Shown here piece after piece: positions 22,275 to 49,555 of a DNA stretch of 64,000 nucleotides (positions are counted from its first letter, which is position 1; the number at the start of each line of letters is the position of its first letter). Origin of the DNA: Chrysemys picta bellii (Eukaryota); NCBI RefSeq assembly GCF_011386835.1, contig NC_088810.1:124001-188000 (forward strand). Direction: 5' to 3'. Under the pieces are notes generated by a model that had not been told where the DNA came from, searched no databases, and was given only the letters and a program-made list of their open reading frames with translations. The position numbers and the translations under genes were made by a program.

Positions 22275-24090
22275 TTATTATTATTTTTAATAGGTGAATT
22301 ATGGTAGCACCAAGGAGCTTCCTCATGCACCGGGACCCCGTGTGCCTAGCGCTGTACATTAGGTGTATTACGGTAGCACCGGGACCCCGTGGGCTAGCGC
22401 TGTACATTAGGTGTATTACGGTAGCACCGGGACCCCGTGGGCTAGCGCTGTACATTAGGTGTATTACGGTAGCACCGGGACCCCGTGTGCCTAGCGCTGT
22501 ACATTAGGTGTATTACGGTAGCACCGGGACCCCGTGTGCCTAGCGCTGTACATTAGGTGTATTACGGTAGCACCGGGACCCCGTGTGCCTAGCGCTGTAC
22601 ATTAGGTGTATTACGGTAGCACCGGGACCCCGTGTGCCTAGCGCTGTACATTAGGTGTATTACGGTAGCACCGGGACCCCGTGTGCCTAGCGCTGTACAT
22701 TAGGTGTATTACGGTAGCACCGGGACCCCGTGTGCCTAGCGCTGTACATTAGGTGTATTACGGTAGCACCGGGACCCCGTGTGCCTAGCGCTGTACATTA
22801 GGTGTATTACGGTAGCACCGGGACCCCGTGTGCCTAGCGCTGTACATTAGGTGTATTACGGTAGCACCGGGACCCCGTGTGCCTAGCGCTGTACATTAGG
22901 TGTATTACGGTAGCACCGGGACCCCGTGTGGCTAGCGCTGTACATTAGGTGTATTACGGTAGCACCGGGACCCCGTGTGGCTAGCGCTGTACATTAGGTG
23001 TATTACGGTAGCACCGGGACCCCGTGTGGCTAGCGCTGTACATTAGGTGTATTACGGTAGCACCGGGACCCCGTGGCCTAGCGCTGTACATTAGGTGTAT
23101 TACGGTAGCACCGGGACCCCGTGGCCTAGCGCTGTACATTAGGTGTATTACGGTAGCACCGGGACCCCGTGTGCCTAGCGCTGTACATTAGGTGTATTAC
23201 GGTAGCACCGGGACCCCGTGGGCTAGCGCTGTACATTAGGTGTATTACGGTAGCACCGGGACCCCGTGGGCTAGCGCTGTACATTAGGTGTATTACGGTA
23301 GCACCGGGACCCCGTGGGCTAGCGCTGTACATTAGGTGTATTACGGTAGCACCGGGACCCCGTGGGCTAGCGCTGTACATTAGGTGTATTACGGTAGCAC
23401 CGGGACCCCGTGGCCTAGCGCTGTACATTAGGTGTATTACGGTAGCACCGGGACCCCGTGGCCTAGCGCTGTACATTAGGTGTATTACGGTAGCACCGGG
23501 ACCCCGTGTGCCTAGCGCTGTACATTAGGTGTATTACGGTAGCACCGGGACCCCGTGTGCCTAGCGCTGTACATTAGGTGTATTACGGTAGCACCGGGAC
23601 CCCGTGGGCTAGCGCTGTACGTTAGGTGTATTACGGTAGCACCGGGACCCCGTGGGCTAGCGCTGTACAAACATAGCACCGGAGGACAGTCCCTGCCCCG
23701 CAGAGTTTACAGTACATGACAAGGGACAGCGAATGGAAACAGCCGGACAAGGAGACAATGAGACAGTAGGGGTCAACATGACAGGCTGCAGTCTGGGCCT
23801 GGCCGGTGTCATTTGTAGGCCTCATCGGGAAGGCGAGTGCTGAGGAGGGATGTGAAGGTGGTTGAGACTTGCTTTGTGAGTGTTTATAGGGCACGCCTCC
23901 CCCATGGGAGGGGCCCATGGCAGAAAGCACCAGGGACGTGCTTAGAATTAGGACAGGCGGGTGATGGAAGTGGACAGCACAGGCCCATGGCGGTGGGGAC
24001 TGATGTTCTGATACTGACAGGTAGGGTGAAGCTAGGACGTGGAAGGCCGTGAAAGTGAAAAGAAATAGCTTATGCTTGGTATTGTTATGC
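22275..24090 (-). mobile_element. L2 LINE 3' fragment containing an expanded VNTR
   Basis: (TAA)n-type tail (ttattattatt on +) at ~22276; gacagtccctgccccgcagagtttacagt and further L2-like antisense sequence to ~24090. Confidence 0.6.
22330..23668. repeat. 48/49-bp VNTR, 28 unit starts (last truncated)
   Basis: Unit ccgggaccccgtg(tgcc/ggc/tggc/gcc)tagcgctgtacattaggtgtattacggtagca; no spacers. Confidence 0.97.
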
Positions 24091-24526: not shown

Positions 24527-24891
24527 TGAGTATTGTTTGGGGTTTTCATTCCTCCTGCTAGTGCTAGTTTGCAGAAGCAGGACTTTGTACCCTCGGTGAA
24601 TAAACAAGGCTGCGTTCAAGACAATATCGGACTCCATCATGAATTTGTACGGCCAGCTGGGACATCGCCAGGGCCCCGAACTTGGATTAGCTGCTTGGGT
24701 CAGAGGTGTAACACGACCATAGAGAAGAGGAGCCAGCCAGAGCGGAGAGAGAGCCCATTGTTTTGGCCAAAAGAACATGATCTTTGCAGCAGGCAGCATC
24801 CTGCATGGATATGAGTGGGGCCAGACTGCATTTGTCAGGCCAGAGAGAGATGATGAGCTTTAGCTGTGGGGATGGAGAGAAACAGTCTCAG

Positions 24892-24958: not shown

Positions 24959-25205
24959 AGTCTCAGATCAGGGCTTTCTGGGCAGCACCAGCCCAGGCAG
25001 TTTCATTTCGGGGGCTGGGAGCCCAAAGCCCTACCCCCCACTGGACTGTAGACAGAGCTCATGGCCAGGTCATGTGGGGATGGTGCTGAGGTTAATGAGT
25101 GACAGGAGGAGGCGGGGGTGACAGGGCTGTTACCCCATCCACTCCCCCTTGTCTCTAACTTGTCTCTTTCCTCCATTCTGCCAGGTTCTCCGGGAAACTC
25201 CCAGC

Positions 25206-25764
25206 ATGAAGCTTCTCACTGCTGTCCTGTTCCTGGCCGTGCTAGGTGAGTGTGTCTCGGTGCAGCCCCACGCCTGCCCCATTGGGCGCTGGCTGACAGT
25301 GTGTGTGGGGATCCCTCTGCCTGGAAGCCAGGTCTTTTGGGCACCCTCTCCCACAGGAATCAACTTTGACTTTCCAAGTGGAAACCACTAAAGTACCTGA
25401 TAGAGACTCGGTCACAGGAGCGGGGGAGAGGGGGAGGGAATGCAGCTTGGATTTGGGGGGAGCAGGAAACATGAATTAGAAACAGTGTAGCCGACTGAGC
25501 CTTTCCCAGCTCTGGGAACACCCTGCTTTGCTAAGCATTCAGCGAGGTGCTCTGTTTACTGGGTCCCGATCCATTCAATCAGGCAGAGTGCTGGCTGGGG
25601 AGTCTCAGGACTTGTCTACATTGGATGTTTCTGGCACTGGTCTAACCCTTTAGTGTGTAAAACAGTTTGCATCCGGTGTAAGACACATCCAGCTCAGAAC
25701 TGTGGTGTGCCTCACGGGTGTGAACGCTGGCTGACTGGAACACTGTCAAGGCAGCGGAAAAATC

Positions 25765-25795
<31 letters not shown>

Positions 25796-28700
25796 CCGCG
25801 GTATAAACACTTTGCACTGGTGTAAAAAGGATATTGGAGAATCGGTGGGGGCTCAAAGACGGGCAATGAGAGGGAGTCAGGGTCTGGGGAAATGCCCTGG
25901 GAGGACAGGATGAAAACACTGGGCGTGTTGTCTAAAAAGGAGACAGATAAAAGGGGATGTGATAAACATATTGTTCCCTTCTACAAGAGGCAGACAATAT
26001 CTCTCTGGCAAGGCCCCAAATCGATGGTAAGAGTCAGGTCTCGTTTTTGGTACAATCCTGTTGATTTACAGAGAATGGGCACAGAATTCCTTTCCCCTGA
26101 ACACAGCAGGAACATACAACAGCAGGTGGTTTCCTTTTCCAGAAATCCAAGCTTGCCTCTCCACCAGCTCTGTGCTCCAAGGAGCCCTAGCTCTGTTCCC
26201 TCCCAGGCCAATGCTCACAACAGCGTCTCTCCCTGTCTGCCAGCTTTGTGCCTTTGATACACACAGACATACACAGCTGCTGCCAGCCAGTGCCCCATCC
26301 CCTGCGTTTGAAATCAGTCACTAGGGAAACCCCTTGGCCCACACGGCTAAGCTTCTGCTCAGGCCTTGCCCTTCTGGTGAGTGCCTTGGGCAGTGGCTTC
26401 TCTGGTATCAGTTCTCACTACAAAAAGGGATATTTAATTGCTCTTTCTGTCAGTTTGGATGAATCAGAGAACTGAACCCTGGAAGGCACCTTAAGAGTTC
26501 ATCTAGTGCAGCCCGCTGTTCCGAGGCAACTCCAAGTAAACCTAGAGCTCACCAGTGCTAAATAGAGTGAACAGTTACCTCCTATGTCTTACATAGCACA
26601 CTCCTATTAATACACCCCAGAATGATATAAACCTTTTTTGCAGCTGCATCACATTGTTGGCTCATATTCAATTTGTGATCCACTCTAACCCCCAGATCCT
26701 TTTCAGTAGTACTACTGCCTAGCCAGTTATTCCCCATTTTGTTGTTGTTCTTTTCCTTCCTAAATTAAGTACTTTGCACTTGCCTTTATTGAATTTAATC
26801 ATGATAAATTGGAGAATTGGACAGAAATCAACAAGGTCGTTTTGAATTCTAATCCTGTCCTCCAAAGTGCTTGCAACCCCTCCCAGCTTGGTGTCATCTG
26901 CAAATGTTTAAGCATATTACCCACTCCATTCTCCAAGTCATTAATGATAATATTGACTAGTACTGAACCCAGGACAGACCCCTTTGGGACCCCACTGGGA
27001 CCCTTTGGAACCCCACTGGGACCCTATGGGACCCCTTCCAGTTTGACAAGTGCCTCATTGATAACTACCCTTTGAGGGTGATCTTTCAGCCACTTTTGCA
27101 CCCACCTAATAGCAATTTCCTCTAGACCACACTTCCCTGGTTTGCTTCTGAGAATGTCACATGGGACTGTATCAAAAGCCTTATGAAAAAATCAAGCTAT
27201 AATCACAGCTACAGCTTCCCCTCTGGCCACTAGCCCAGTAACCCTGACAAAGAAGGAACTGTCTGGGCATGATTTCTTCTTGACAAATCTCTGTTGGCTA
27301 TTTCCTAGAACCGTGGTTCGCAACGTTTTTTTTTCACGGACCACTTGAAAATTGCTGAGGGTCTCGGCGGACCACTTAATGCTCTTTTCAAATGTCGTTT
27401 GTACCATTAGCTAACTATTGTAAAGCACTTTGGATAAAAGCGCTATATAAAAATAAACTTAATTTTTTTTGTTCTACAGATAAAATAACACAACTCATAT
27501 TTTCACATCCGTAGTCTTACCTTTCTAAGGCGATAGATGTGCCCTCTCTGCCCTGCTGCGGCAGCCCCCAAGTTGGGGCTGGGAAGGGTGGGGAGGTCTC
27601 AGGAGCCACGCAGCCCCCGAGCTGGGGCTGGGAAGGAGGGGGTCTCTCCCCACCACACCAGCCCCCGAGCTGAGGTTGGAAAAGACGGATGTCTCTCCCC
27701 GGCAGCCGCAGCCCTGGAGCTGGGGAAAGTCGCCTTTCTCTGGTGGCCGCAGCCCTGCATGTCCCAAATTCCTCACACCCCCTTTTCTGACCCCACTGCC
27801 CCCTCCCACCTACCCCCCATTCTCCCCAAGGCCACCCCCTCACCTTACATGTGTGTCTTCTCCAGGGTCCAGGCACCTAATTAGTGGAGCTTGCTCAGCA
27901 GGGTGAAGGGTGCTCAGGGAACTCATCTCCAATAAGCAGGTCTGTGATCGACTGCAGGGGATCAGGATACTCTGTTCCCCCAGCTCCTACCCTTAGGACG
28001 GGGGACAGTCAATGGCAGTGCAGGTGATGAATTCAGAACCAGTGAAACGACTGTCACGGGAAGTTGCTGATGCCAAGATCTTCACAGGATTCACAGAGGC
28101 GTTTCTATGGATAACGGGAGTATCCAGAATGACCATAGTTAGAGATTTGGGAGGCGCATAAACCCGGCTGCCCCAGTGCTAACTATTAGGGTGAGGAGGA
28201 AAAATACCCACATCTGCTACTGAGGGGTTCTTGCACATTCCCCTGAACCACTGGGTGCCAGCTTCTAGATACTGGCCTTGACAAACCATGGGGCTGATCC
28301 AGTCTGCCAATCCCAGTGTCCCAGTGCCTTATCAGGAGTCTGTGGCAAAGCTGGGATAGAAGCCAGGAGTCCGGGCTCCCAGCCCCTCTGCAGTAACCAC
28401 TAGACCCCATTCCCCTCCCAGAGCTGGTTGGAACCCAGGAGTCTTAAGCCGCATCCCAGTGCAGTTAACATGTGCCCCTCCTTCCAGGGAGCGGTAGCTC
28501 AGTGGGTCTCTCCAGGCCAGGGCAGCCCTGGGGCCTGCAGTGACACTGTCTCACTGGGGATCCCTTTCCTTTCCCAGGCTCCAAGGCCTCTCCCCTCAGC
28601 AAGGAACCCACGCCAAGGCTGGACCAGGTTGCAGACGCCATCGAACGTAACTTGGAGCAACTTATCAGAATGACCGTGGAGCTGATCGAGAAATCCGAGC

Positions 28701-29637
28701 TGGGCCAGGAGATCGAGTGAGGCGCCTGCCCTGACTTGGAGGCAGGGTTTGGGAGCCCCCCTTCCATGCCAGGGACCCAGAGTAGAGGGGTTAGAGTCAC
28801 CCCTGACTGCAGGACCCACACCTCTGCTTCTGGGCCCAGCAAGCCCCCCGAGCTCAGCAGGGATTGGCCTGGCCAACCCCAGGGACGCTGGCAATTCAGC
28901 AACGGGTGCAGAATTGTGTCCATTATTTGGCATGGCAGGGCCCGATGCCGCTGGGACCTGGGGGCTGGGGCCAGATCAAAGCCAGCAACACTGGGGGTGG
29001 GGAGGACCCATATCACATTCCCAACCCCCATGAGCCAGCCAGTCCTCCTGCCCTGGGATCACATTCCCGTCCCAGACACCTCCCAATCCAGCCAATCCTT
29101 CTGCCTTGGGGTCAGACAGAGCCAGCAGCCCAGAGGGTGAGTCACTCTAAGCTGCTTCCCTTTCTTTGCAGGGAGTGGAAACTCTATTGGAAAATTAATA
29201 ACTTCTTTGATGACCTAAACCGTAAGGTGCCCCCCAAGGCCCAGGAGCAGCTGAGGAACCTGAGCAGGCCGGTGGAAGAAAGTGTGACAATGCTGTGGGA
29301 ACTGGAGAGGAAGGTGCAGCCCTACATGAACCAGCTGCGTGATGTCCTGGTGTCCTACACCGAGGGGCCGCTGGAGATGGTGGAGCACTACAGCAAGACC
29401 CTGCTTGGTAGCCAGGCGTACAGCAACGTCCCGTCTCGGGTGGAGCTGCAGGAGCAGCTGGGCTCCTATGCCCAGGAGCTGGGGCTGCAGGAGTTCGAGC
29501 GCAGTCTGGCAGCCTACACCAGGGACCTGCACCGGAAGCTCAGCCCCTATGCTGAGGACTTGCATGGCTGGCTGAACTCCCGCTGGGACGCCTTCATGCA
29601 ATGTTTCAGTGAAGAGACCGGTGGGGGTGCCTCATAG
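25206..29637 (+). CDS. ApoA-IV/A-I-like exchangeable apolipoprotein, gene A; 3 coding exons (25206-25245, 28578-28716, 29172-29637), 214 aa
   Basis: 40+139+466=645 nt, GT-AG sites, phases 1 and 2 as in all apoA/E genes. Signal MKLLTAVLFLAVLGSKA; exon 3 ends IEKSELGQEI; exon 4 is amphipathic with QPY/SPYAEDL motifs. Exon 2 starts at 25185; AATAAA at 29747. Confidence 0.85.
26465..27305 (-). mobile_element. CR1 LINE fragment with reverse-transcriptase remnant, in gene A intron 2
   Basis: Minus-strand peptide NSQQRFVKKKSC..SFFVRVTGLVARGEAV matches the CR1 RT motif; CR1 3' end near 26470. Confidence 0.8.
27305..27890. mobile_element. hAT-Charlie-like non-autonomous element fragment
   Basis: Begins ctagaaccgtggttcgcaac; internal gcggaccact motifs and ccccagc-rich segments. 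Confidence 0.45.
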
Positions 29638-29746
29638 GCCCTGTCCATACCTGGAGCCCAAGGCGATCCCCCAGGATTGAGGGGGACAGCTCCGCTATAA
29701 GGCACCCCGCAGCAGGCTCCCTGCCCCATACAGCCGTCCATCGCTC

Positions 29747-29752
29747 AATAAA
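29747..29752 (+). terminator. Gene A polyadenylation signal
   Basis: AATAAA 110 nt after the stop; its context gctcaataaacca is shared with gene B. Confidence 0.75.
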
Positions 29753-30049
29753 CCAGCTGTTTAATCATGCAGTGATGTGTGGTCCTGCTGCATCTCTGGG
29801 GAAGGGGGCTTGGGGTGTCAATCCCCCCACAGCGCAGGAGGTCACCAGCCCTGTGGAGGGGCATGGCGCCAATTACCCACTCCCCACAAACTGCTCAACC
29901 TCCCCCCCAATGCTCCCCCTAAACCATCCCCCCTTAAACATGCCCCACCCCTGTGCTCCCTTTAAACTGCCCCACCCCAGAGCATCCCCCAGCTTACATT
30001 CTAAACTGCTCTCGCTCCATCTCTTCCCCTACACTGCACCACCCTGGCC

Positions 30050-30316
30050 CATAGGCGTGGGAACTGGGGATGCAGGGCGTGATGCAGCACCCCCAGGTTT
30101 TGCATGGGGTCCCAACCACTGGCCCCATACCTGGGGCTCTGCTCCCAGTCCCAGCTGTGGTCCCAGCCTCAGCCCCCCCACCCCTCCCGGAGCCACAGCC
30201 CAGTCCTGGTCCCAGCTCTGGGGAGAGGGGACACGGACAGAGATAAGGGGGGGTGAAAAGTAAAAAATTTGGGCTTTCAGCACCCCCACTGTAAAAAGCG
30301 TTCCAGGGCCACTATG
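30050..30316. mobile_element. DNA transposon-like MITE
   Basis: Imperfect TIR cataggcgtgggaac / gttccagggccactatg with internal cagcaccccc subrepeats; no TSD found. Confidence 0.4.
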
Positions 30317-31895
30317 TCAAGTTCTGCACAGAGCTGTAGCAACAAGTCCCCACTTCCCAAGGAGCTCCCTCAAGTTCAGTAACAGCCCTATCGCCGCCCC
30401 TTTTAACGTGCCCCCCGCCCTCCCGGGGAGATGTTGCCGTTCAGAGGGAAAGTAAGGCCCGATAGCCCCTGTGAACATGTGAGCCCTTGCTCTGCTCACT
30501 CCAGCGTTAATGAGCTCCCCTGGAGAAGGCTGGGGGCGGGAATGAGACACTCAGGCTGGCTGGGCCAAGGAGGAGGCAGGAAGCCCCGCGAGAGGGATCA
30601 GCGCCAATACCGGATTGATAATGGCGCCGGGCCCATGGTCGAAAGGGGCCCCGGCGCGCTCTCCTCCGCCCCCCTGGCGCACTCTCCTGTGGGGTCAGAG
30701 CTTGATGCTGCGGCTCCGTGGCAGCCTCTGCTGGCACCCTGGCTCCTGCCCCGCCACTTTCCCCAGCGTGCTACGTACGTCTTGCCGGGGGGAGCCGCAG
30801 CACGCAGCTCCGAGTCCGGGGGGGGAGGAGGCCTGTCCCCCACCTCTTTCCCCAGCGGGCTACGTCCCCCCCCCTTCCCCGGGCGCTGGTCAGTTGGATC
30901 AGCCTTGCAGGCAGGAGGGGGGCAAGGAGGAGCGAGCCGCAGCACGCCACTCCGGGGAGGAGGAGAAGACAAGCCAGGGTGAGGCCTAGGGGAAGGGGCT
31001 GGAATTGGGGCATACCCCCTCCAGCCCCCTGCGTGAGCACACCCCCGACCCCAGCCCACCCCGCAGCCCCCTGCCCACCCTAACCCCTGCACCCCCCTCC
31101 TGAGCCCCTGGCCCTGCCCTGACCCTGCACTCCCCTCACACCTCCTCAGCACCCCCTCACACACGGATTGTCTGTGGTGCCTGGGAGCAGGGGGGGCAGA
31201 GGGACTTGTCAGTGCTGGCTGCCATGCCCCCTGCCAGTGGGAATGCCAAGAAACTACCTCCCTGCACTCCGGGGAGGGGAGGGGGTGCCGCCCAGTTTGG
31301 GGGGAAAGGGGCAGTTGTGGGGCAAGTCCGGGTGCAATGGGGGAGCTGGCGGTGACTCCGTGTGAGGGGTGTAGGAGAAGCAGGGTGTTAAGGTGGGGGT
31401 TGGTGGGGCAGGGGGCAGAGGGCAGAGGGAGGGAGGGAGGGGAGAGTCTGGGTTGAAGGTGGGGGTTGGCTCAGTGTGTGTGTGTGTGTGTCTGTGTGTG
31501 TAGAAGGAGGGTAGTAGAAGAGAGGGAGGTGACAGCCCTGAGGTGAAAGTGGGTAGGGAGTGGGCAATAGCAGGGAGATTGAGGAGAGCCTTTGTTAGGG
31601 GGTTAGTTGTGTGGGATGGGGACAGTAGGAGGGATGGGAGGAGAGCCCAGGTGTGAAGATTGGGGTAGGAACTTGAGGCTGGATTGTGGTAGCCTTTGTA
31701 GTAAAGTGTGTGTATTTCAGTGGCCCTTTTTCTCTGCAAAAGATGGGCACCAGCAATTTTCCTCCCCACCCCAAAGGTTTGTAAACATTATTGTACCAAA
31801 GCAGAGAATGCAGCTTTCAAAAAATGTATTTAGGAAACATAACTTTGGGTGGAGGAGGTGGTGGGGAGATGCAGGTGCGACACCACTGACTGCTG

Positions 31896-32282
31896 CAGCC
31901 GGGATTAATATGGCTCATAAGTGTGTTAATTAAGCACTTGTGTTCAGGGTCCTAAGCAGGCCCTGAGTGTTTAAAGAAAAAAACAAAAAAACTAACAAAC
32001 AACCCCCCCCCCACACACACACACAAACCAAATTCAGTGGTGTTCTGCGTACATTGGTGTTAGCCCAGTTTGTTCTCTATGGGCTGAGTGGCAGTCTCAG
32101 TTTGGCTTCAAACATCTTATTTTGTTTTTGAATAAATGTTTTCATTCCCATCCCGGCAATACCACATTTACTATGGCATCAATGGTGCTATCATGCTAGG
32201 ACCATATCTGGAAGGGGTTCATCACAACCACATGGGGGCCCACCAATATGTTTGGCGCCGGGCCCACAAAAAGTTGATCCAG
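31896..32282. mobile_element. hAT-like MITE
   Basis: Ends cagccgggattaat / gggcccacaaaaagttgatccagt. Confidence 0.4.
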
Positions 32283-32859
32283 TAACACAGAGGCCTCAAG
32301 GGAGGGCCTGGGGAGAGGGCCGAGAAGTGTGCTTGGTGCTGTCTGGGCTGGCGCATGGGGATTGTTGTAGAAATGGAGGAGGGCACTTAAAATAAAAGGG
32401 GGTAGTGAAGGCACAACCCCGGGTGTCCGTGCAGTGTCCCACAGAGGAGCCACGTCCTGTGACACCCCCCGCCCCCAGCCTCCATCCCCCGCCCTTGGGC
32501 AGGCTTAGCACTGGAGCCCCCAGGATGTAAAAGGTGCCATATTCCCTCCCCTGCATCAGCCAGTCCCCATCCTTCTGACAGCTCAGCGCCCGCGCCGCCT
32601 AGAGGGAAAAGGCCTATGTCCCATTCCCTGCCACCCTGAGCCAGCCACTTCCCTGCCCCTGGGCTGGATCAGAGCTGGTGGCCCATTCCCCATCCCACCT
32701 ATGCCACTGGCAGCAATGATCGCCCCACCCCCACCCCCGCCCCCCGAAGGATGCCTGAACAGCAGAGTCACTGTTAGCAGGGCAATCTCGCCCCCTGCCC
32801 ACAGACCCTCGGATTTGCAAAGTTAAAGGGAAAAAATGTCATGACAGAGTAGCCCCGCC

Positions 32860-33352
32860 CCACACTGTTGCCTGAAGGGTGCTGCGCACACCCACGCGGG
32901 AGCAGGACTGCCAACAGCCTCTAGTCACGGTGGTGCCTTAAATAAAGGTCCCGACAGCCCTCTGCACCCGGTGCTCCCTGCTGCCAGGTAACTATTGTGG
33001 TGTTTGATGTGCCCAATGGCCAACCAGAGCCAGAAGCCCTTTCTGTTCAGCCAGCCTCCCACCAGCAGCTAAACACCCCTCCTGTACCCCAATTCCCTGC
33101 CCCAGCCCTGAGCCCCTGCCCAGAGCCTGCATCCCGCACCCTCAACCCCCTGCCCCAGCCCTTAGCCCCCTCCAGCACCCAAACTCTCTCCCAGAGCTTG
33201 CACCCCTCACCCCCTCCTGCACCCCAAACCCCAGGCTCAGCCTGGAGCCCCCTTCCACACTCCGAATCCCTCGACCCCAGCCCAGATCCAGGGCGGGGCA
33301 GGGCAGGGCAAGGGTGTTTGGGTTTCTGTGATTAGACAGTTGGCAACTCTAG
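32860..33352. mobile_element. hAT-like MITE
   Basis: Right end gttggcaactcta (TAGGGTTGCCA-type TIR); internal cccctgccccagccc subrepeats. Confidence 0.4.
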
Positions 33353-33899
33353 CGCCAGGGGCCCTGTGCTGCAGAGCGGGGTGTATGTGTGGGGGGCTCA
33401 GTAGGAGGCGCTCCCCCCTCACAGGCAGTGCTGGCTCCAATGCAGTGCTGGGGACCTGTGCTGCAGAGCAGTGGGGAGGCTCAGTGGGGGGGGGGCTCCC
33501 GCTCACAGGCAGTGCCAGCCCCAGTGGGCCTGCACTGCAGACAGCATGGTGAGGAAAGTTGGTGAGTAACACTGGGCAGAGCTGTTTATCGGGAGGTCAC
33601 AGCAGGGCAGGGATAGCACAAGCCCTAGGGGAGAGGCTTACGGGGATCATCGTGGGGGGAGTTTCGAAGGGGAAAGGCCCCACCCAGGAGACGGCCCTAT
33701 TTCCCCCTGTCACATGTCCATGATCATGCCCCTGGCTTGCGCCCCACCCGTCGCTTGGCTAAGAGCCCGTTCTCCCTCACGGAGCGGGGCTGCACGACCC
33801 TGCCTGGGGCAAAGCCCCGAGCTGGATTATAAGAGCTGCTCCCCTCCCCCAGGGATCCAGCAGCAGCAGCAGCACAGGGGGTGATTAATCAGCAGGTGG

Positions 33900-33905
33900 T
33901 TTATT
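33900..33905 (-). terminator. Gene B polyadenylation signal
   Basis: tttatt on + at 33900-33905; minus-strand context gctcaataaaccacctg. Confidence 0.75.
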
Positions 33906-34148
33906 GAGCTCCTGGGAGGTTGTTACAGACACAGGGAGTGACTAGGGGTGATGGGACAGGGACCCTGGGCATGTCAGGGGCCCTTAGAGAGGAGGCTGCC
34001 CCCTCTCGAGCACCTGTGACCCCTGAAGGCTCCGTGCATGGATGGGGTCTGTGCTCCCAGTCCCATGGGCTCCATGGATGGATGGGGTCTGTGTCTCACC
34101 CCTCGCCCGCCTGGCTCTGTGTTCCCATCTCCCACCAGCGCCGGCCCC

Positions 34149-36267
34149 TCACTGGAAGTGCTGCAGGAAGGAGGCCCAGAGGGAGTCCAGCCGCCCCTGC
34201 AGGTCCTGGGCGTAGGGACCCAGCTGGCTGTGCAGCTGCTCCAGCAGCCCCTCGGCATAGGGTGCCAGCCCAGCCTGCAGCTCCTCCACGCTCTTCTGCA
34301 GCTCCGCGATGGATGGCTGCACCTTCTGGTTCAGCTCCCGCAGGTCCCCGGAAACCTTCTGCACCAGCAGGTCCGTGTCCTTGCTCAGCTTGGCCACCAG
34401 CTCCTGGGCCACAGCGGGCAGCTGCTTCTGCACCTCTGTGCCATAGCTGTAGGCAGCCAACAGGCTGTGGCTGACGCGGCTGCTGTGGGGACGGGGGAGC
34501 GGATGAGAAGGGAATGGGGGACAGGGCCTTGCCCCTCTATGGGGCTCTGGCTCCGATCCAGCCCCAGGGTCGGGGGGAATGGCTGGCCCAGGGGAATGGG
34601 GGACATGGGGCCTTGCCCCTCTATGGGGCTCTGGCTCCGATCCAGCCCCAGGGTCGGGAGGACTGGCTGGCCCAGGGGAATGGGGGACAGGGCCTTGCCC
34701 CTCTATGGGGCTCTGGCTCCGATCCAGCCCCAGGGTCGGGGGGAATGGCTGGCCCAGGGGAATGGGGGACATGGGGCCTTGCCCCTCTATGGGGCTCTGG
34801 CTCCGATCCAGCCCCAGGGTCGGGGGGACTGGCTGGCCCAGGGGAATGGGGGACATGGGGCCTTGCCCCTCTATGGGGCTCTAGCTCTGATCTGGCCCTA
34901 GGCGGGGGTCTGGTTGACTCAGAGGGGTGGGGAATGAGACACGGAGGCCTTTCCCTTCTATAGGCTCTGGCTCCGATCCAGCCCCAGGGCAGGGGACTGG
35001 CGACTCAGAGGGGTGGCCGGGTGGGGACACGGGGCCCTGTCATCCTGGACATGGGCTCAGTTCTGACTCAGAGGATCCCGGTGAGGGCCGGGGTTTGCTG
35101 AGCCCGGAAGCCGAGGTGTGGGGGCTGCAGTCAGGGGGGCGACTAACCTCCCCCATCTGCTCTGGGTCCATGGGGAGGATGGGAGGAGCTACCAGCCCGC
35201 AAGGTAGGGCTCCCCCCACAAGTCAGTGCCGGGTTCTCACTTGATCTCCCGGCCCAGCTCAGATTTATGGATCAGCTCCTTGATTTTCTCGGCTTTTGCC
35301 ACGTACTCCCAGAAGGCTTCCCGGACCTGCTCCAACCTCGGTGTGGGCTCATCGCTGAGGAGAGAGGCCTGGCTGCCTGTGGGGTGACAGAAATCCCCAG
35401 CAAGACCCTGTCATTGGAGGCTGCAGACCCACCCTGGGGAGACTCAGAGATGGGACTCTACAGAGCTACCTTGCTCTGCAAGGAGGGGCCAGGGCTCAGG
35501 ATTCCTGGGCCAATTCCAGGCTCTGCAATCGACTCCCCATGTGGCTTTATGAGAGTCACTTTGGGAAATTTTCAGTTTCTTATTGGAAATCAGGAGCCCC
35601 CACCACGCCGGGGGCCGCCCTGACCCCGGCCGAGCCCGGGGCTCCCCACCGCGCTGGGGGCCGCCCTGGCCCCGGGGCTCCCTACTGCGCCAGGGGCCTC
35701 CCTGACCCCGGCTGAGCCCGGGGCTCCCCACCACGCCGGGGGCCGCCCTGACCCCGGCCGAGCCTGGGGCTCCCTACTGCGCCGGGGGCCGCCCTAACCC
35801 CGGCCGATCCCGGGGCTCCCCACCGCGCCGGGGGCCGCCCTGATCCCGGCCGAGCCCAGGGCTCCCCACCGCGCCGGGTGCTGCACACACACAGTGAGAG
35901 ATGGCCGCTGCCCTAATAGAGACAGGCCGGATTATTCTCCGTATTTTACAGATGGGAGCTGAGGCCCAGAGAGATTCAGGGGCATCTCCAGGGCTACCCA
36001 GGGAGTCTGCAGCAGAGCAGGGAACTGAACCAAGAAGTCCTGAGCCCCAGCCCAGTGTATTTACCACAAGTCCCAGCTCCCAATTCTCTCCCTGCGTGCG
36101 TGGGCTCTAGATGTGTCTGTGGGCTCGAGGCCGCTGGGTAACTAAGTGTAGGGTCCCAGGCAGAGGATCCCTTATGGGGCTTCCCTAGTGGGGCAGGGGC
36201 AGGCCTGCACCAAGATGCACTCACCTGCCAGGACGGCCAGCGTCAGGACGAGAGCGAAACGCTTCAT
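34149..36267 (-). CDS. ApoA-IV-like exchangeable apolipoprotein, gene B; 3 coding exons (36267-36225, 35376-35241, 34482-34149), 170 aa
   Basis: 43+136+334=513 nt, GT-AG sites, phases 1 and 2. MKRFALVLTLAVLA/GSQASLLSDEPTPRLEQVREAFWEYVAKAEKIKELIHKSELGREI/NSRVSHS...APYAEGL...GPYAQDLQGRLDSLWASFLQHFQ*. Exon 2 starts at 36287; AATAAA at 33900. Confidence 0.9.
34505..34990. repeat. 82-84 bp minisatellite, ~5-6 units, in gene B intron 3
   Basis: gccttgcccct starts at 34526, 34610, 34692, 34776 and 34860. Confidence 0.9.
35595..35880. repeat. ~45-bp CpG-rich minisatellite, ~6 units, in gene B intron 2, L2-derived
   Basis: ccccaccacgccgggggccgccctgaccccggccgagcccggggct, ending in gccgggtgctgcacacacacagtgagag. 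Confidence 0.85.
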
Positions 36268-36773
36268 GCTGGGAGCTCCCTGAGACCCTGGTGCGATGGA
36301 GGAAAGAAGGTTAGAGCAGAGGGGGAGCAGACTGGGATGGGGGTTCTGACGGCCCAGCCGCCAGCACCTCCTGTCACGCGTTACCCTCGCACCTGGTCAC
36401 AAGCTCTTTCTGCCATCCTAGTCCAGTGCTGGAGGCGACTGCGGGGAATCCCTGGCTGCAGCCCCTGGGCTCGGGCAGGAGGGGAAACAGAGTCAGTCCC
36501 GGGGGGGTGGTGGGCAGTGAATAATTGAACCAAAAGCTCTGCAGCCTTGATTAGAATCATTGGGGGGGGGGGGGTTAATCGATCATAGCTGGGTTTAGAC
36601 ATGGGGTTTGGGGGGTCTTTCAAAAGTGTTGCTTTAAAATCTTTCCAGGGGCCTTCTCCCACCCAACAGTTCCTTGTAAATCTGGGGTCACAAGGACCCA
36701 GAGGGAACCACCCCCCTGCCTGGGGGTGAAAGCAGCTCTCTCTGCTGGGGCTGGCCTTGGTCACCGGGCACCA

Positions 36774-36796
36774 TTTATACCTGTGCAAAGGGCAAA
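36774..36796 (-). promoter_or_regulatory. Gene B TATA box with adjacent HNF4/DR1-like site
   Basis: Minus strand reads tttgCCCTTTGCACagg-TATAAAT, ~490 nt upstream of exon 2. Confidence 0.55.
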
Positions 36797-38842
36797 ATGC
36801 CATGCCCCGGGATGGCAGCATTCTACCCTGATGCAAACAACAGTGTGGGGTGAACTGGGCACTCGGGTGCCAGGATGCCCAGAAAGCGCGGCCCCCGATT
36901 AGGCACCAAAATAAGTGTCTGGCTTTTCAGGAAGGCCCGTAGCATGCGAGGGGCTGAGCAGTTTGGGATCCGCAGCCCCTTGTATTGCCAGCGCTGAAGA
37001 ACAGGGTGGCTCTGCCCGGACAGCCTGAGCCCCAGTTTGAGGGACCCACCCCACCACGAGGTGCCGTTCTCCGCACAAACCAACAGCATTTATATCCTGC
37101 CTGAGTCCAGCAGCGACTCCATGAGACCTGCGCCAAGCAGCCAAGCTACTCAGCCCCTCTCCAAGCTGTGGCTGGCCTTACCTTGCTCTGCCGGCTGCCA
37201 GGTCCCTGTCTCCTGCAGTAGGCCCTCCTGCCGCACTGCACCTGGTACCCAGGGACAGACAATAACCACAGAGAATTCCCTCTTATCTCCTCTCAAGGCC
37301 TGGCCACCCCCTGGCACAGGGCTGCAGGGGCAGCCAGTCAGAGCAGAGTGCTAAGGCGTGGGGCGTACCTCTGCTAGGTTTGTAATCCAGGGCGACATCC
37401 TTGGAGCCCCGTCCTGCCCCCAGACTGAGCCTAGCCTGGCTATGGGAGTAGAGCAGCTGCCCCCAGCCAAGTCATCCTGGGCCAGATTCTCTGCTGGTGT
37501 AAACTGGCCCAGCTTCACTGAAGTCCAGTGTCCATCCGGAGAGAATGGGAATGACAGATCTTAAAGTACCGTCATGCTTAAACCCACTGGTCCCCACTCC
37601 CAGCCCAGAGCCAGGGCGAGAACCCAGGAGTCCTGGCTCCCAGCCCCTCCCCCAGTAACCACTACATTCCATCAGCTGGTCTCAGGGTTGCATGGGGGGG
37701 TGGGAATCTGTCACTGCCCCCACTGTGGGGGGACAGACTCCTAGCCTTTCCCATTGGCTTGTCCCGCCACAGCCAGCTCTCCGCCCCTCCCCTCCCCTCT
37801 CCTTCCTCACTCCACCACCCCCACCCCCCGTCTCCCCCCCCCCCACCTGCCTGGGACCTTATCACAAAGTGTCCTTTGGTTCCCTCCTGGCCCATCCACT
37901 TCACCCTCCAACGTGGCACTGAAACAGCCTGGCCTGGTCATAGTCCACCAGGCCCAGCTCACAGGAGCGGCCGGCGCAGTGCCAAGGCTGCGGCATTATG
38001 GCCACATCGAGGCAGCAAGGAGCAGGGATGGCTGATCCTGGCCCCCACCTTCGTGGCCTGCGTCACTGGCCAGGCACAACATGCGGGCTGAGGCCCCATC
38101 CATTTCACTCGATTGCAGATGTTTTGGGGTCCCCCAAGCTCAGGGCCCTGGTACAAGTGTCTCCTCCTTCCCCCATTAGCCCTGGCCACCCCTCTCCTGC
38201 CGCAGCGCTGGCCCTGCCTTATCACAGACTGTCTGACCCAGCGCTGAGTCTCACTTTGTGACCCCAGTGGGGCCGGGGCACTCAGCACACTCCACCCCCA
38301 GCCTGGAGCAGGGATACAGGGCTTTACCCGCCAGTAACCTCCCCGCGCCGCCCACTCAGCTCACGGGGGAGTCACGGCTGGGCCATGTTCTCCAGGCTCA
38401 GTGGGTCAAAGTGCTGCAGCAGGGAGGAGCAAGGCCGGCTGGCTCTGGGGAGCTGGGCTGAGCCGGCAGTGCAGGGAGAGATACAGGCAGGGGGCGGGCT
38501 GCACAGCTGCCCTGTGCCCCTCTCACTTCCCTTTCCCGGCTCCGCCAAGAGGGGCAAGGCTGGCTGGTTACACAACCGGCGACAGGATGTGGTTACTGGA
38601 GGGTGCATGGGGTGACTGCTCTCCTGTCAGCAGCATGTTTCCGCAGCCCTCCCAGAGGTTCTCCCACCCGCTGCCTCCTTGGCATTCCTGTCTGCGCCGG
38701 ACAATCTGTACCAAGGCAGCGCAGCCCAGCGTGGTACAGGGCCAGGGGTGCTAGTGCCATTGCGGCTTTGCCTGCTGCTGTGAGAGGCTTGGCCCGAGGG
38801 CCAGGACCCTCTGCTGTAATTGGAGCAAACCCCCAGTGCCTT

Positions 38843-41992: not shown

Positions 41993-43463
41993 CAGACAGG
42001 ACATTTCCAACATCATAGGGGGAGGGGGCGGTGTTTTGAGGGTCTCTATAAAAGATCCTTCAGTTCCCATAACTTATAAACATGATTTACATGCAGAGTC
42101 TCTAACGGCGGGGCGGAGGAACCCCCAATCCGCTGCTCCTCCAGGTGCTGCTGGGGGGGGCTGAGAGGGACCCCCAATCCACTGCTCCTCCTGGTACTGC
42201 TGAGATTCCCCAAACCGTTGCTCCTCCTAGTGCTGTTGGGGATCCCCCCCCAATCCGCTGCTCCTCCTGGTGCTGCTGGTGGGGCTGACAGGACCCCTCC
42301 CTCAAAGCGCTGGTCTTCCTCAGTGCTGCTGGGTGGGGATGGGATGCAGGCAGGGCCCCCCAAACTACTGCTGCTCCTGTTGGGGGGGGGCACAGACCCC
42401 CACTCGTGGTGGGTGCAGAGAGCACTCAATAGGTCCCTTGTGTCTCTTTGGATATGTGTAGGCTGAGAGGGGCGAGGTAGGGCTGAGCAGGGGAGCTGGG
42501 GTTGTGGCCCCATCACCCCAGGTGTAGACTCTGCCCCACAGCTCCCTGGGCTGTGAGATAAGAGGCTGCAGAGCCACTGGTACCCCAGCGATCCAAGGGA
42601 GGGGTGTAATTGGCACAGAGAGAGAGAGGGAATCTCCCCACAGCTGCACCAAGATGGGGTGTGGGGGGCTGTTTGGGGAGGGATCCAACCCCTCCTGGCA
42701 GAGAGTTGCGGGGTCAGTGCACCCCCACCAGCTGGGACAATCCATTCCTGAGGGGATCCGCCCAGCCCCGATCCCCAATCAGTGCAACAGGCCAAGCGAC
42801 CCCACCCCCAGGACAGAGCCGGTCCCTCTCCCATTGCTCCGGGGGAAGGACAGTTCCTGAGGTCACAGCGCCCTCTGGTGAGGAAGGATGTCAGCACAGG
42901 GAACCAGGCAGAAGAGGGCATTTTACAGCCGTCACTGGGTTCACCTACCTGGTGCCCCAGGACAGCCCCCAGCCAAGTCCAAGCACGGGAAGAGATGGGA
43001 CACTGGGTCCCCTCCCCGAGGCAGGGAGGGTTGCGCCTGCCCTCCCACCAGGAGCTGCTGGAAGAGCCCAGGCACCACCTGAGGGCCCCAGCAGCCGCTG
43101 CCCCTGCACCAGCCAGCTCCCCATTTTCCAGCAGCCCCTGGGGACAGCGGGTCGAACCTTGTGGGACCTGTCCCGAGGGGCAGACGAGGTGACTGGAACA
43201 GGACAGTGCCAGAACCGCCGCACTAAGGGGCTCGCCCTGGGGATCAGACCCCGGGGCTCTGTCAGGACCTATCCCATGGCCCTCGGGGAGGTGCCTGTGT
43301 GGGGCAGAAAAGGGGCTGGAGCCCCACACTCCAGGGCTTAACTGGGCAGCACCAGCAGGGATGGGTGGGGCAAAGGGTCCCAGAGCGGCTCAAACCGCCC
43401 GGCAGACTGGGCTGGGGACACTGGAATGGGGGAGGAGGGCTGGTGGAAGAGGAGGAGAGGGCT

Positions 43464-46400
43464 CTAGCCAATGGTGAGGCCGAAGCCACACTGGAACTTG
43501 TTCTTGCGGTGGTTCAGGAAGGCCCCATGGCCAGCGTCAGGGGCAGCGGCAGCAGCTTCTTCTCCAGCACCGCACCCACGATCCAATTACTGTCCACAGA
43601 GCCTGCGGCAGAGAGCAACGTTAGTGGCACTGGGAGAGGCTGGGGCGCGGGCACAGAGGGGAAGGGCGGCCTGGGGCTGCCGTACCTTTGAAGAGCAGGT
43701 TGGCCTTGGGCAAGTCAAGCTGGTAGCCAAAGGAGACGCTAGTGTCCTGCATGCGCGTGCTGGCCTCAAACTCCACGCCCACCTGCAGCTGTGGGAAGCA
43801 GGGTTAGTCTGGCGAGCAGAGCTGCCAATCGCACAGTAGGATCCCAGCCCCCCAGCTTCCACCCCTCCCCCACAGGACCCCAGCCCCCTAGCTTCCACCC
43901 CTCCCCCACAGGACCCCAGCCCCCTGGCTTCCACCCTCCCAATGTGATCCCACCCTCCCCAAACACTATCCCAGACCACCCACCCCCAACGTAATCCCAG
44001 CCCTCACCACCCAAACCCAGCCCCCAGCCTTCCCCAATGGGATGGCAGCCTCCAGGCTTGCTGCTCCAAATTGTCTGCATCGACTGTTCCTGGGCAGGGC
44101 ACCCCCCCACTCCCTTGCCTGCCCAGGCTCTCAGCTGTGCACCACAGCACATCGCTTATACATAGCTCTCCACACGTCACCTGCCCCCACCCCTTGCTCC
44201 CAGACTGGGGGCCAAAGCCCCACGCTCATGTCAAAGGGGGAGCCAGATGGGAACGTAAGCCTCTGAGTGCCACATACCTGGTCATTGGCTTTATGGTAGT
44301 AGGTTGCATGGGCCCCGGCTTGCCCCACCGTCAAGGTCCCAATCCAGTTAGGTGCTGTGTGGAGAAGGGAAGAGTGTGTGAGTGTCCAAGTAGGGCCCCA
44401 CCGAAGCCCTGAGCTAGGGAAGGGAACCCAGGAGTCTCGACTCCCAGTCCCCTTGCTCTAACCCACTAGACCCCACTCCCCTGCTGGAGCTCAGGATATA
44501 ACCCAGGAGTCCTTCCCCAGCTCCCTCAGTACCTGTGTATTTCCCAGCCAGAGACATGACGGTGCCCTCCTCTCCTGGCCGGCGGTGATAGACCAGCTCG
44601 CCGCCCAGCGCCAAGCAGGGTGTGATGCTCTGTAGGTAATGGGCTACCAGGATCCCTGCGAAGAGAGACTCGTCAGCTGGGGCTGGGCCCAGGAGGTTAT
44701 GAGGGGCAGGGTTCAGACTAGTGGTGACGGTAGGCAGGGGCCAGGTTGGAGAGCTGGAGGGAGGGGAAGTGGAGGTGTCAGAGGCTGGGAATTGAGAAGG
44801 GGAGGCAGGAGTCAAGCTGGTGGGGGACTTCAGAGACGGGGTAGAATTTCAGAGCAGGAGCTTCAGAGGTGGGAACGAGGCTTTCACCTGAGCCCACCAG
44901 GATGTCGGGGTTTCCCAGCGTCACTGCTGCCGTGAAATCCTCCCCCCGATACTCTCCATCCACCTGCCAGTTCACGAACTTGGACTGCTGCGTCTGGAAT
45001 GAGAGTGGGGGGACATGATGAGACCGTGGCAACCCCCAGGAGGCACACATCCCCCAGAGGCAGATTTACCATGAAAGAAACAGTGCGGTGGCATGGGGCC
45101 CCCAATGACTGGGGGGTGGGGGGGGACACCCAAAATGCAGGACAAACCTCATCGACAACCTGCCCCCGAGGCCTGGCCGGCAGCACAGCAGGGATCAGGC
45201 AGGCAGGCTGCCTGCATTCGGTGGCCAGTGGCCCCATGCCATTCCCGGAAGCACCCGGCTGCTGGAAGCGGCTCTGCATCCTGCCCCCACCAGCACACAG
45301 AGAGCCACTCCCCCCCCCACCCCCCACCCCCAGGGGTGCGCAGAGACGTGCCACCAACAGTGCAGCAGGGCTAAGGCACCTCCCTGTTCGCGCTGCCTCC
45401 CTCCCTCCGCTCCCAGAAGCGGTCGGCATGTCCCTGCGGCCTCTGGGGGAAAGGTGGGTGGTGTCTCTGTGCATTTTCCCCACCCGGAGCACTGACTCCA
45501 CAGCTCCCATTGGCCAGGAACTGCGGCCAATGGGAGCTGCGGGGGCCACACCTGCGGGCAGTGGCGCACAGAGATTCCCCTGGCCCCCCTGCCAGAGGAG
45601 TGTGCCAGTCACTTTGGGAGCCGCACTGCCCAAGGTAAGCGCCGACCCCCCCGACCCCTCCCACACCCCAACTCCCTGCCCCGAGCCTACACCCAAACTC
45701 CCTCTCAGAGCCCAATCCCCACATCCCAACCCACTGCCCCAATCAAGGTACCTCACTTGATTTTCATTTACTTCCTATTAGTTATAATATAGGAGAAGAA
45801 TGAAGAAAAAAAATAAATGAAAAATAGAGGGGATATAAGAGAGAATGTTCTTTCTCTTGGCTGGGTCCCGAGGCGGGGCCCCTCAAAATGAAGCTGTGCA
45901 CAGGGCCCCACTAACTCTAAATCTGCCACTGACATCCCCGCTCCTTTTACCAGGTAACACCATTACCTTAAACTGTGAGGGAGCAGCCACACTGCACTCA
46001 CTCCCCTCCCCAGCCAGGACTCTGACGACTCTGACAGGGGTATACACAGTCCCTCTGATCCCCCCCACCCCACCCCAAAGGGACAAGCTGAGAGACAGCT
46101 CTGCGGGGGGTATACACAGACGCTCTGATTTTCCTCCCCCCCCAAAGGGACGGGCTGAGAGACAGACCGGCAGGGGGTATACACAGACGCTCTGACTCAC
46201 ACACACACACACCCCCCGCCGCAAAGGGACGGGCTGAGAGATGGACCTGCGGGGGCCGGGGGTATACACAGACACTCTGACACCCCCACCAGCCCGGCCC
46301 CCACAAAGGGGAGGGTGGATAGAAGGACCCACGGGGGATGGGGGGGGGAATACACAGATGCTCTGACACACACACCTGTGAAGGGGCGGGTTGAGAGATG

Positions 46401-49400: not shown

Positions 49401-49555
49401 CGATCCCCCTTCTCCTCCGGCCGCTCCTGCGCAGGGGGGCCCAGCCCGCTGACGGGGGGCATGGTGAAGCCAGGCGGCACTGACACCAGCCCAGATCCAG
49501 GACTCGGCATGGTGGGGGAGGGTGTGGGGGAGCTGGCGGCCAGGACGTTACCCAT
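43464..49555 (-). CDS. TOMM40: Mitochondrial import channel Tom40; 9 coding exons (49555-49354, 49071-49004, 48115-48023, 47762-47661, 44993-44888, 44655-44533, 44354-44278, 43788-43686, 43602-43464); 337 aa if one missing base in the last exon is restored
   Basis: MGNVLAAS...[38 protein letters not shown]/... /[10 protein letters not shown]...[15 protein letters not shown]. Internal exon sizes 68, 93, 102, 106, 123, 77, 103 match human as I recall it. The last exon is 139 nt rather than 140 (see finding). Confidence 0.97.
45930..47640. repeat. Complex minisatellite in a TOMM40 intron, split by a solo LTR
   Basis: Core tacacaga(c/t)gctctgacacac on both sides of 46526-46975; ~185-bp higher-order unit x3 at ~47030-47595. 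Confidence 0.85.
46526..46975 (+). mobile_element. Solo LTR (450 bp)
   Basis: TGtgac...gtgaCA termini, internal AATAAA at 46884, flanks ccctc/ccccc (4 of 5 match). Confidence 0.7.
48183..48480. mobile_element. hAT-Charlie MITE with perfect 8-bp TSD, in a TOMM40 intron
   Basis: TSD cactagac at 48175-48182 and 48481-48488; TIR tactggttctcaa / ttgagaacccctg. Confidence 0.8.

What the first reader, a model, noticed from the sequence alone, without database searches (positions are those of the whole stretch)
25185..36796. Two extra intact apoA-IV-type apolipoprotein genes inserted between TOMM40 and APOE
Seen: two complete three-coding-exon genes (A, + strand, 214 aa; B, - strand, 170 aa) with signal peptides, the family's phase-1/phase-2 introns, amphipathic Pro-Tyr repeats, no stops and poly(A) signals. 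Established: in human the order NECTIN2-TOMM40-APOE-APOC1 has no gene between TOMM40 and APOE, and APOA1/A4/A5 lie in a separate cluster. Teleosts keep apoa4 copies next to apoe/apoc1. Inference: this reptile keeps, and has duplicated, an apoE-linked apoA-IV lineage that mammals lost, i.e. additional lipoprotein components with no mammalian ortholog.
Basis: partly seen in the sequence, partly recalled or inferred. Interest (0 to 1): 0.92.

Follow-up and report, generated by a model that had tools for sequence, protein, structure and literature searches.

The report
Reptile fish-type apolipoprotein genes beside APOE
Between TOMM40 and APOE this turtle carries two real apolipoprotein genes, one shown here to be spliced and expressed, from an old lineage that fish call apoA-IV and mammals lost; both are already in public annotation under inconsistent names.

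Summary
Gene A (+, 214 aa) and gene B (-, 170 aa) each have three coding exons with phase-1 and phase-2 introns, a signal peptide and AATAAA.

- **Expression:** B's two coding introns are spliced out in contigs of four likely-RNA runs from four studies. A's exons are held by the same kind of runs.
- **Annotation:** Both are already in RefSeq. B is identical to painted-turtle "apolipoprotein A-I-like isoform X5"; A is "uncharacterized LOC112060915". Orthologs elsewhere are called A-IV-like or Eb-like.
- **Canonical cluster:** The same genome also has APOA1, APOA4 and APOA5 on another contig.
- **Phylogeny:** In a 76-protein tree, A, B and their turtle and squamate relatives form one clade (100/98). 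It lies outside APOA4/A5, APOA1 and APOE. Joining it to APOA4 is rejected (AU p=0.003).
- **Synteny:** The order TOMM40, B, then A on the opposite strand is collinear in Komodo dragon. An electric ray has a B-like gene right after TOMM40, and a ricefish (Oryzias) has apoA-IV next to apoE.

So B is the positional ortholog of fish "apoA-IV". A is an old inverted duplicate that predates the turtle-squamate split, not a turtle novelty. Novelty is modest, because the genes are annotated and fish apoA-IV/APOE linkage was published in 2015.

The parts
24639..24698 (+). Gene A, 5' exon (at least this part); probably untranslated
   Evidence: 100% match to the N-terminal extension of the RefSeq model P0001. 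The signal peptide starts only at 25206.
25185..25245 (+). Gene A exon with the start codon (ATG at 25206) and signal peptide; phase-1 donor
   Evidence: AG acceptor before 25185, GT donor after 25245, 40 coding bases.
28578..28716 (+). Gene A second coding exon (the family's N-terminal block); phase 1 in, phase 2 out
   Evidence: AG/GT sites, 139 nt. It ends in KSELGQEI, as the homologous exon of B does (KSELGREI).
29172..29770 (+). Gene A last exon: CDS to 29637, then 3' UTR with AATAAA at 29747-29752
   Evidence: PF01442, E 1.3e-7. Likely-RNA runs of three studies hold 0.53-0.66 of the words of 28578-29765, where the exons make up 0.62.
33896..34482 (-). Gene B last exon: CDS 34482-34149, 3' UTR, AATAAA at 33905-33900
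   Evidence: Contigs of four runs cover it and join 34482 to 35241.
35241..35376 (-). Gene B second coding exon
   Evidence: It is joined on both sides in contigs of four runs.
36225..36287 (-). Gene B exon with the start codon (ATG at 36267-36265) and signal peptide
   Evidence: Contigs reach 36289; the two extra bases are ambiguous with the end of the upstream exon.
37182..37241 (-). Gene B upstream 5' UTR exon. Contigs run about 460 nt further 5', and RefSeq isoforms use another exon near 38046-38100
   Evidence: The loose end of contigs X1 and X12 maps at 37184. The donor CAAG|GTAAGG and the acceptor were read. The N-terminus of P0012 matches these exons.
43461..49555 (-). TOMM40 coding exons (flanking gene)
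   Evidence: Exon-by-exon tblastx at 89-100% identity to the Porin_3 gene of Varanus locus L013. Porin_3 Pfam hit. First exon ORF.
14566..17300 (-). APOE (flanking gene): last exon 15180-14566, N-terminal block exon about 15800-15645, signal exon near 17250
   Evidence: PF01442 at 188 bits. It falls in the APOE clade with Polypterus APOEB.

Best explanation
A and B are functional genes for secreted, exchangeable (lipid-surface-binding) apolipoproteins.

Each has a cleavable signal peptide followed by amphipathic alpha-helices. These helices would lie on the phospholipid surface of plasma lipoproteins, as those of apoA-I, apoA-IV and apoE do.

B is the positional ortholog of the gene that lies directly downstream of TOMM40 in cartilaginous fish and next to apoE in teleosts, where it is named apoA-IV. 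It is a paralog, not an ortholog, of the tetrapod APOA4 in the APOA1 cluster. In emydid turtles B has lost several helical repeats by in-frame deletion.

A is an inverted tandem duplicate of that gene. It arose before turtles and squamates split and has diverged faster. Mammals have no gene in this interval.

Shown here: gene structure, B's splicing and presence in RNA-type runs, family membership, the separate clade, and synteny. Inferred: secretion, lipoprotein binding and physiological role. By analogy with fish apoA-IV the role would be dietary and yolk lipid transport, but that was not tested.
For: - **Structure:** searches give the exons, splice sites and phases.
- **Family:** PF01442 hits both proteins. 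Ortholog profiles match human apoA-IV best among solved structures, then apoA-I, then apoE.
- **Helices:** hydrophobic moment is 1.14 for A and 1.21 for B, against 0.64-0.66 for shuffles. AlphaFold models are all-helical but of low confidence.
- **Expression of B:** GT..AG joints 34482>35241 and 35375>36224 appear in contigs of four runs from four studies. One 1250-nt contig spans all coding exons. Exon word depth is hundreds against 0-33 in introns.
- **Expression of A:** the share of words held by likely-RNA runs matches the exon fraction.
- **Conservation:** intact A orthologs occur in six other turtle genera, including a pleurodire. B orthologs occur in turtles and three squamates, and A-type genes in at least eight squamate genera.
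- **Canonical cluster:** APOA1, APOA4 and APOA5 lie elsewhere in the same genome.
- **Tree:** the reptile clade is 100/98. The group {APOE+APOA1+APOA4+APOA5} stands apart at 93/91.
- **AU tests:** reptile clade plus APOA4 gives p=0.0034, plus APOA4/A5 p=0.028, plus APOE p=0.045.
- **Synteny:**
- **Shared motifs:** B-type and teleost apoA-IV share N- and C-terminal motifs.
- **Literature:** fish apoA-IV shares synteny with APOE, not APOA4 (PMC4348566). An 'apolipoprotein A-IV-like' protein distinct from apoA-IV, A-I and E was quantified in green-turtle plasma (PMC8084024).
Against: - A clade of reptile genes plus teleost apoA-IV is in the best tree but only at 68/11. The tree is unrooted, so orthology to fish apoA-IV rests mostly on position and motifs.
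- The AU p-values for APOE (0.045) and APOA4/A5 (0.028) are not far below 0.05.
- A's splice junctions were not seen directly.
- The runs are only guessed to be RNA, and their tissues are unknown.
- A and B score below Pfam's gathering cut-off: 36 and 59 bits against 90.
- I could not confirm that the green-turtle plasma accession is an A or B ortholog.
- Absence from archosaurs and amphibians rests only on protein databases.
Confidence: 0.8

Rival explanations
1. A and B are fairly recent copies of the APOA1-cluster APOA4 (or APOA1) that moved next to APOE in turtles.
For: NCBI names them A-IV-like or A-I-like. Among solved structures the best sequence match is human apoA-IV.
Against: The reptile clade lies outside a well-supported APOA4+APOA5 clade (99/95). 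Forcing it together with APOA4 costs 24.9 lnL units (AU p=0.0034). The same arrangement is present in Varanus, and a B-like gene follows TOMM40 in a ray. A and B have 5' UTR introns, whereas APOA4 is described as a three-exon gene (PMC6854765).
Confidence: 0.04
2. A and B are diverged tandem duplicates of APOE that arose within tetrapods. Their resemblance to fish apoA-IV would then be convergence of short helical repeats.
For: They sit beside APOE. The AU test only marginally rejects a reptile-plus-APOE clade (p=0.045). One RefSeq name is 'apolipoprotein Eb-like'.
Against: The APOE clade is 100/100 and includes Polypterus and teleost apoE, without A or B. B shares long N- and C-terminal motifs with teleost apoA-IV, not with APOE. 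A and B are strongly acidic (net charge -11 and -6), and reading their sequences shows no basic receptor-binding cluster like the one in the turtle APOE. In the ray the gene after TOMM40 already has this type.
Confidence: 0.08
3. One or both genes are transcribed relics with no protein function. The emydid B, shortened to 170 aa, is the likelier candidate.
For: B in this lineage lacks about 65-80 residues present in other turtles and squamates. The four differences seen in B's last exon between the runs and the window are 2 synonymous and 2 non-synonymous. AlphaFold confidence is low.
Against: The reading frames are open, with correct splice sites and signal peptides, in every species sampled. 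The deletions in B are in frame and leave both conserved termini in place. Exon word depth is high in contigs of likely-RNA runs from several studies.
Confidence: 0.08

Closest known systems
Teleost apoA-IV (zebrafish apoa4a, apoa4b.1-3; about 250-aa proteins linked to apoE)
   Same: Shares the three-coding-exon structure. Shares the N-terminal motif (DEP.P.LE...AFW.YVAKAT) and the C-terminal motif (DL...L..LW.SF) with B-type proteins. Lies next to apoE, or to TOMM40 in a ray (PMC4348566). It is on the same side of the tree as A and B.
   Different: Tree support for a joint clade is weak (68/11). The emydid B is about 80 residues shorter. A has no fish counterpart and has a different C-terminus with a cysteine.
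Tetrapod APOA4 (APOA1/C3/A4/A5 cluster)
   Same: Belongs to the same superfamily (PF01442). Human apoA-IV is the best-scoring solved relative. Shares PYA(E/Q)(D/E)L-type helix starts.
   Different: It lies at a different locus, on contig C16 of this genome. Its mature region is about 350 aa, against 150-195. It forms a separate clade, and a joint clade is rejected. APOA4 is described as lacking the 5' UTR intron that A and B have (PMC6854765).
APOE
   Same: It is a neighbour in the same cluster, with the same exon phases and a similar N-terminal block exon.
   Different: APOE carries the basic LRKLRKRL receptor-binding cluster and is longer. It forms its own 100/100 clade.
Chicken Apo-VLDL-IV (Apo-IV), a 17-kDa lipoprotein-associated protein (PMC3898076)
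   Same: It is a small non-mammalian apolipoprotein of similar size, expressed in liver and intestine.
   Different: Its published peptides do not resemble A or B, and its authors saw similarity to apoC-IV. It is probably a different gene.

Membership tests
Exchangeable apolipoprotein A1/A4/E superfamily (Pfam PF01442) | Signal-peptide exon ending in a phase-1 intron, a short N-terminal block exon ending in phase 2, and one long last exon | tested here: met
   for A and B. The same junction phases were read in this genome's APOA1, APOA4, APOA5 and APOE.
Exchangeable apolipoprotein A1/A4/E superfamily (Pfam PF01442) | Pfam PF01442 match above the gathering score (90 bits) | tested here: not met
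   A scores 36.1 bits and B 59.3 bits, both significant by E-value (7e-9 and 5.5e-16) but below the cut-off. The full-length B ortholog of Caretta scores 98.1 bits and passes.
Exchangeable apolipoprotein A1/A4/E superfamily (Pfam PF01442) | Amphipathic alpha-helical repeats | tested here: met
   Hydrophobic moment is 5-6 sd above shuffles. The predicted models are all-helical but have pLDDT of only 57-63.
Exchangeable apolipoprotein A1/A4/E superfamily (Pfam PF01442) | Presence on plasma lipoproteins | not testable with these tools
   The only lead is an 'apolipoprotein A-IV-like' protein in green-turtle plasma (PMC8084024). I did not verify that its accession is an A or B ortholog.
Tetrapod APOA4 orthologs | Location in the APOA1/APOC3/APOA4/APOA5 cluster | tested here: not met
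   That cluster lies on contig C16 at 30.50-30.53 Mb. A and B lie on C20 beside TOMM40 and APOE.
Tetrapod APOA4 orthologs | Clade membership | tested here: not met
   Tree. AU p=0.0034 for the reptile clade plus APOA4.
Fish-type, APOE-linked apoA-IV lineage | Position directly beside TOMM40 and/or apoE, in the same orientation | tested here: met
   B lies downstream of TOMM40 on the same strand. The same is seen in Varanus and in the ray Narcine, and Oryzias has apoA-IV followed by apoE.
Fish-type, APOE-linked apoA-IV lineage | Monophyly with teleost apoA-IV | tested here: inconclusive
   It is present in the best tree at 68/11. Grouping with the ray gene is not rejected (p=0.39).
APOE | Basic LDL-receptor-binding cluster and membership of the APOE clade | tested here: not met
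   Reading the A and B sequences shows no basic cluster, and their net charges are -11 and -6. The APOE clade is 100/100 without them. AU p=0.045.

The most novel reading that the evidence does not exclude
Reptile A and B, teleost 'apoA-IV' and the ray's TOMM40-adjacent gene form one ancient jawed-vertebrate apolipoprotein lineage distinct from APOA4. The fish genes would then be misnamed. The lineage would have been lost independently in mammals and probably in archosaurs. Reptiles would also carry a fast-evolving paralog (A) with a function of its own in lipoprotein metabolism.
Probability: 0.55. Interest if true: 0.5.

Novelty: new member of a known kind. Interest (0 to 1): 0.4.

Why it matters
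One genome carries both the canonical APOA4 and the APOE-linked 'fish-type apoA-IV'. That makes them separate paralogous lineages. It supports, with a living tetrapod example, the doubt Otis et al. 2015 raised about fish apoA-IV orthology. It also bears on transferring zebrafish apoA-IV results to mammalian APOA4.

The finding exposes inconsistent public naming of one gene: A-I-like, A-IV-like, Eb-like and uncharacterized. It also points to two likely lipoprotein components in reptiles that no mammalian model covers. This is useful evolutionary and annotation knowledge, not a new kind of system.

Tried and rejected
- **Chicken Apo-VLDL-IV (PMC3898076):** considered as a possible bird ortholog. 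Its peptides do not match, so it was set aside.
- **Weak PF01442 matches elsewhere in the genome (L008, L009):** these are low-complexity repeats, not apolipoproteins.
- **Rhineura locus:** the 10-kb flanks hold no TOMM40, only the convergent second apolipoprotein gene. The Eublepharis flank shows only another apolipoprotein gene.
- **Look-up of Gopherus B (P0009):** no record was found.
- **Fold searches:** not run, because both AlphaFold models have pLDDT of only 57-63.
- **Last homolog search:** it was capped at 8000 candidates and returned only teleosts, reptiles and the ray. It says nothing about amphibians, coelacanth, crocodilians or birds.
- **Variant count in B:** four sites are too few to test selection.
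- **Literature:** searches for a description of these reptile genes found none. The library is partial, so this is not proof of absence.
Full report
**Observation**

I rebuilt both gene models from the raw sequence. Gene A lies on the + strand with coding exons 25206-25245, 28578-28716 and 29172-29637. Gene B lies on the - strand with coding exons 36267-36225, 35376-35241 and 34482-34149. All internal boundaries are AG/GT. The intron phases are 1 then 2.

Both last exons hit Pfam PF01442, the apolipoprotein A1/A4/E domain. The E-values are significant but the scores fall below the gathering cut-off. The mature regions have helical hydrophobic moments 5-6 sd above shuffled sequence. AlphaFold predicts all-helical chains, but with low confidence.

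The window holds exactly three PF01442-type genes: A, B and APOE. TOMM40 lies on the - strand at about 49555-43461. It aligns exon by exon, at 89-100% identity, with a Porin_3 gene of Varanus. APOE lies on the - strand and ends at 14566. In TOMM40's orientation the order is TOMM40, then B on the same strand, then A on the opposite strand, then APOE.

**Expression**

I laid contigs of four runs on 33850-36850. The runs come from four studies and carry two organism labels. They are only guessed to be RNA, but they are small, transcriptome-sized assemblies.

All four show the joints 34482>35241 and 35375>36224, with GT..AG ends on the - strand. One 1250-nt contig spans all three coding exons. Exon word depth is in the hundreds, against 0-33 in the introns. 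The contigs then continue into an upstream exon that ends at 37182. So B has at least one 5' UTR intron, and the TATA-like site near 36780 is intronic.

For A, likely-RNA runs of three studies hold 0.53-0.66 of the words of exon, intron and exon (28578-29765). The exons make up 0.62 of that stretch. This supports spliced expression, but A's junctions were not seen directly. A also has a 5' exon, covering at least 24639-24698.

**Already annotated**

My B model is identical to RefSeq 'apolipoprotein A-I-like isoform X5' of Chrysemys picta bellii. A differs by one residue from 'uncharacterized protein LOC112060915' of the same species.

Orthologs carry a mixture of names. A is 'apolipoprotein A-IV-like' in Gopherus, Mauremys, Emydura and Dermochelys. 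B is 'apolipoprotein Eb-like' in Trachemys and Malaclemys, and 'A-IV-like' in Gopherus, Caretta and Chelonia. In squamates B-type genes occur in Rhineura, Varanus and Heteronotia. A divergent A-type group occurs in at least eight squamate genera.

No named member of the reptile clade is from a bird, crocodilian, amphibian or mammal. That rests on protein databases only.

**What they are**

The same genome has the canonical APOA1, APOA4 and APOA5 genes on another contig. A and B are therefore additional genes, not the canonical ones.

I built a careful maximum-likelihood tree of 76 proteins. Chimeric models, fragments and redundant cluster members were left out. The results were:

- A, B and their reptile relatives form one clade (100/98).
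- Turtle A (100/100) and the squamate A-type group (100/100) join each other (88/80).
- APOA4+APOA5 (99/95), APOA1 (99/95) and APOE (100/100) sit together on the other side of a 93/91 branch.
- The reptile clade, teleost apoA-IV (100/100) and a ray gene share the same side.

AU tests gave:

| Reptile clade joined with | Result |
|---|---|
| APOA4 | p=0.0034, rejected |
| APOA4/A5 | p=0.028, less strongly rejected |
| APOE | p=0.045, marginally rejected |
| teleost apoA-IV | already in the best tree, but at only 68/11 |
| the ray gene | p=0.39, not rejected |

Synteny is the stronger argument.

- In Varanus the order is TOMM40 (+), B-type (+), then a further apolipoprotein gene on the - strand. 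tblastx shows this is collinear with the window, including a match between A's last exon and that third gene.
- In Rhineura a B-type gene is likewise followed by a convergent apolipoprotein gene.
- In the electric ray Narcine the gene right after TOMM40, on the same strand, is an 'apoA-IV-like' gene.
- In Oryzias an apoA-IV gene is followed by a gene that matches the turtle APOE.

B-type proteins also share extended N- and C-terminal motifs with teleost apoA-IV. Otis et al. 2015 reported that zebrafish apoA-IV genes share synteny with human APOE rather than APOA4. They also found these genes only tenuously linked to amniote APOA4, and noted that coelacanth has a cluster with both apoE and apoA-IV (PMC4348566).

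Taken together, B is the retained TOMM40/APOE-linked 'fish-type apoA-IV'. A is an inverted duplicate of it that predates the turtle-squamate split. The emydid B has lost about 65-80 residues of helical repeats in frame, compared with other turtles and squamates.

**Mechanism**

The mechanism is inferred, not tested. After signal-peptide cleavage the proteins would be secreted, and their amphipathic helices would bind lipoprotein surfaces reversibly. Neither protein has APOE's basic receptor-binding cluster, and both are acidic. A role as structural or exchangeable surface components is therefore more likely than a role as receptor ligands.

A green-turtle plasma proteome lists an 'apolipoprotein A-IV-like' protein. 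It is separate from apoA-IV, apoA-I and apoE, and it fell and rose together with them (PMC8084024). I could not check which gene that accession represents.

**Novelty and verdict**

However, both genes are already annotated, and the fish linkage of apoA-IV to APOE is published.

What I did not find in the papers searched is the point that reptiles keep this lineage alongside canonical APOA4, plus an old reptile paralog. A survey of 30 vertebrates treats apoA-IV as a single family (PMC6854765).

The result is a new member, or a newly recognised lineage, of a known family. It is of moderate interest for apolipoprotein evolution and for gene nomenclature. An earlier scan note on this window (s1-335704) also read B as fish-type apoA-IV, and my tests agree with it.

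Noticed in passing
window 34510-35001 and 35606-35929: Both introns of gene B carry GC-rich tandem repeats: 84/166-bp units in about 6 copies, and 46/92-bp units in about 4.5 copies. Low-depth contigs from the likely-RNA runs cover parts of the first array.
   Followed up: partly
window 15947-16594: A 45-bp minisatellite of 14.4 copies at 97% match lies in the APOE intron between the signal exon and the N-terminal block exon.
   Followed up: no
window 22327-23669: A 49-bp tandem array of 27.7 copies at 98% match lies in the interval between APOE and gene A, which are oriented head to head.
   Followed up: no
G000:C16:30501579-30528147 (L001, L002, L004): The canonical APOA5, APOA4 and APOA1 genes of this genome lie in one 25-kb cluster, all on the - strand. 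Their exon phases are the same as in A, B and APOE.
   Followed up: yes
G000:C2:200375181-200375417 (L008) and G000:C4:26301515-26301961 (L009): These weak PF01442 matches are low-complexity repeats (MEETKDRLTEK repeats and a Pro/Gly/Ala-rich repeat), not apolipoprotein genes.
   Followed up: partly
window 38046-38100 (- strand): RefSeq isoforms of B begin with an extra upstream exon here and an in-frame upstream ATG. This gives 213-227-aa 'isoforms' whose extension precedes the signal peptide, so it is probably an artefact of choosing the longest ORF.
   Followed up: partly
window 34186 (codon 159 of B) and 34375 (codon 96): Contigs of the likely-RNA runs carry D159G and T96M relative to the window. 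G159 is also the residue in an older RefSeq version. These are allelic or between-taxon differences.
   Followed up: partly
L015 6248-7164 (Oryzias javanicus): A further uncharacterised 252-aa gene lies upstream of apoA-IV on the opposite strand and shows tblastx similarity to the turtle APOE exons. The fish cluster therefore holds more family members than are annotated.
   Followed up: no
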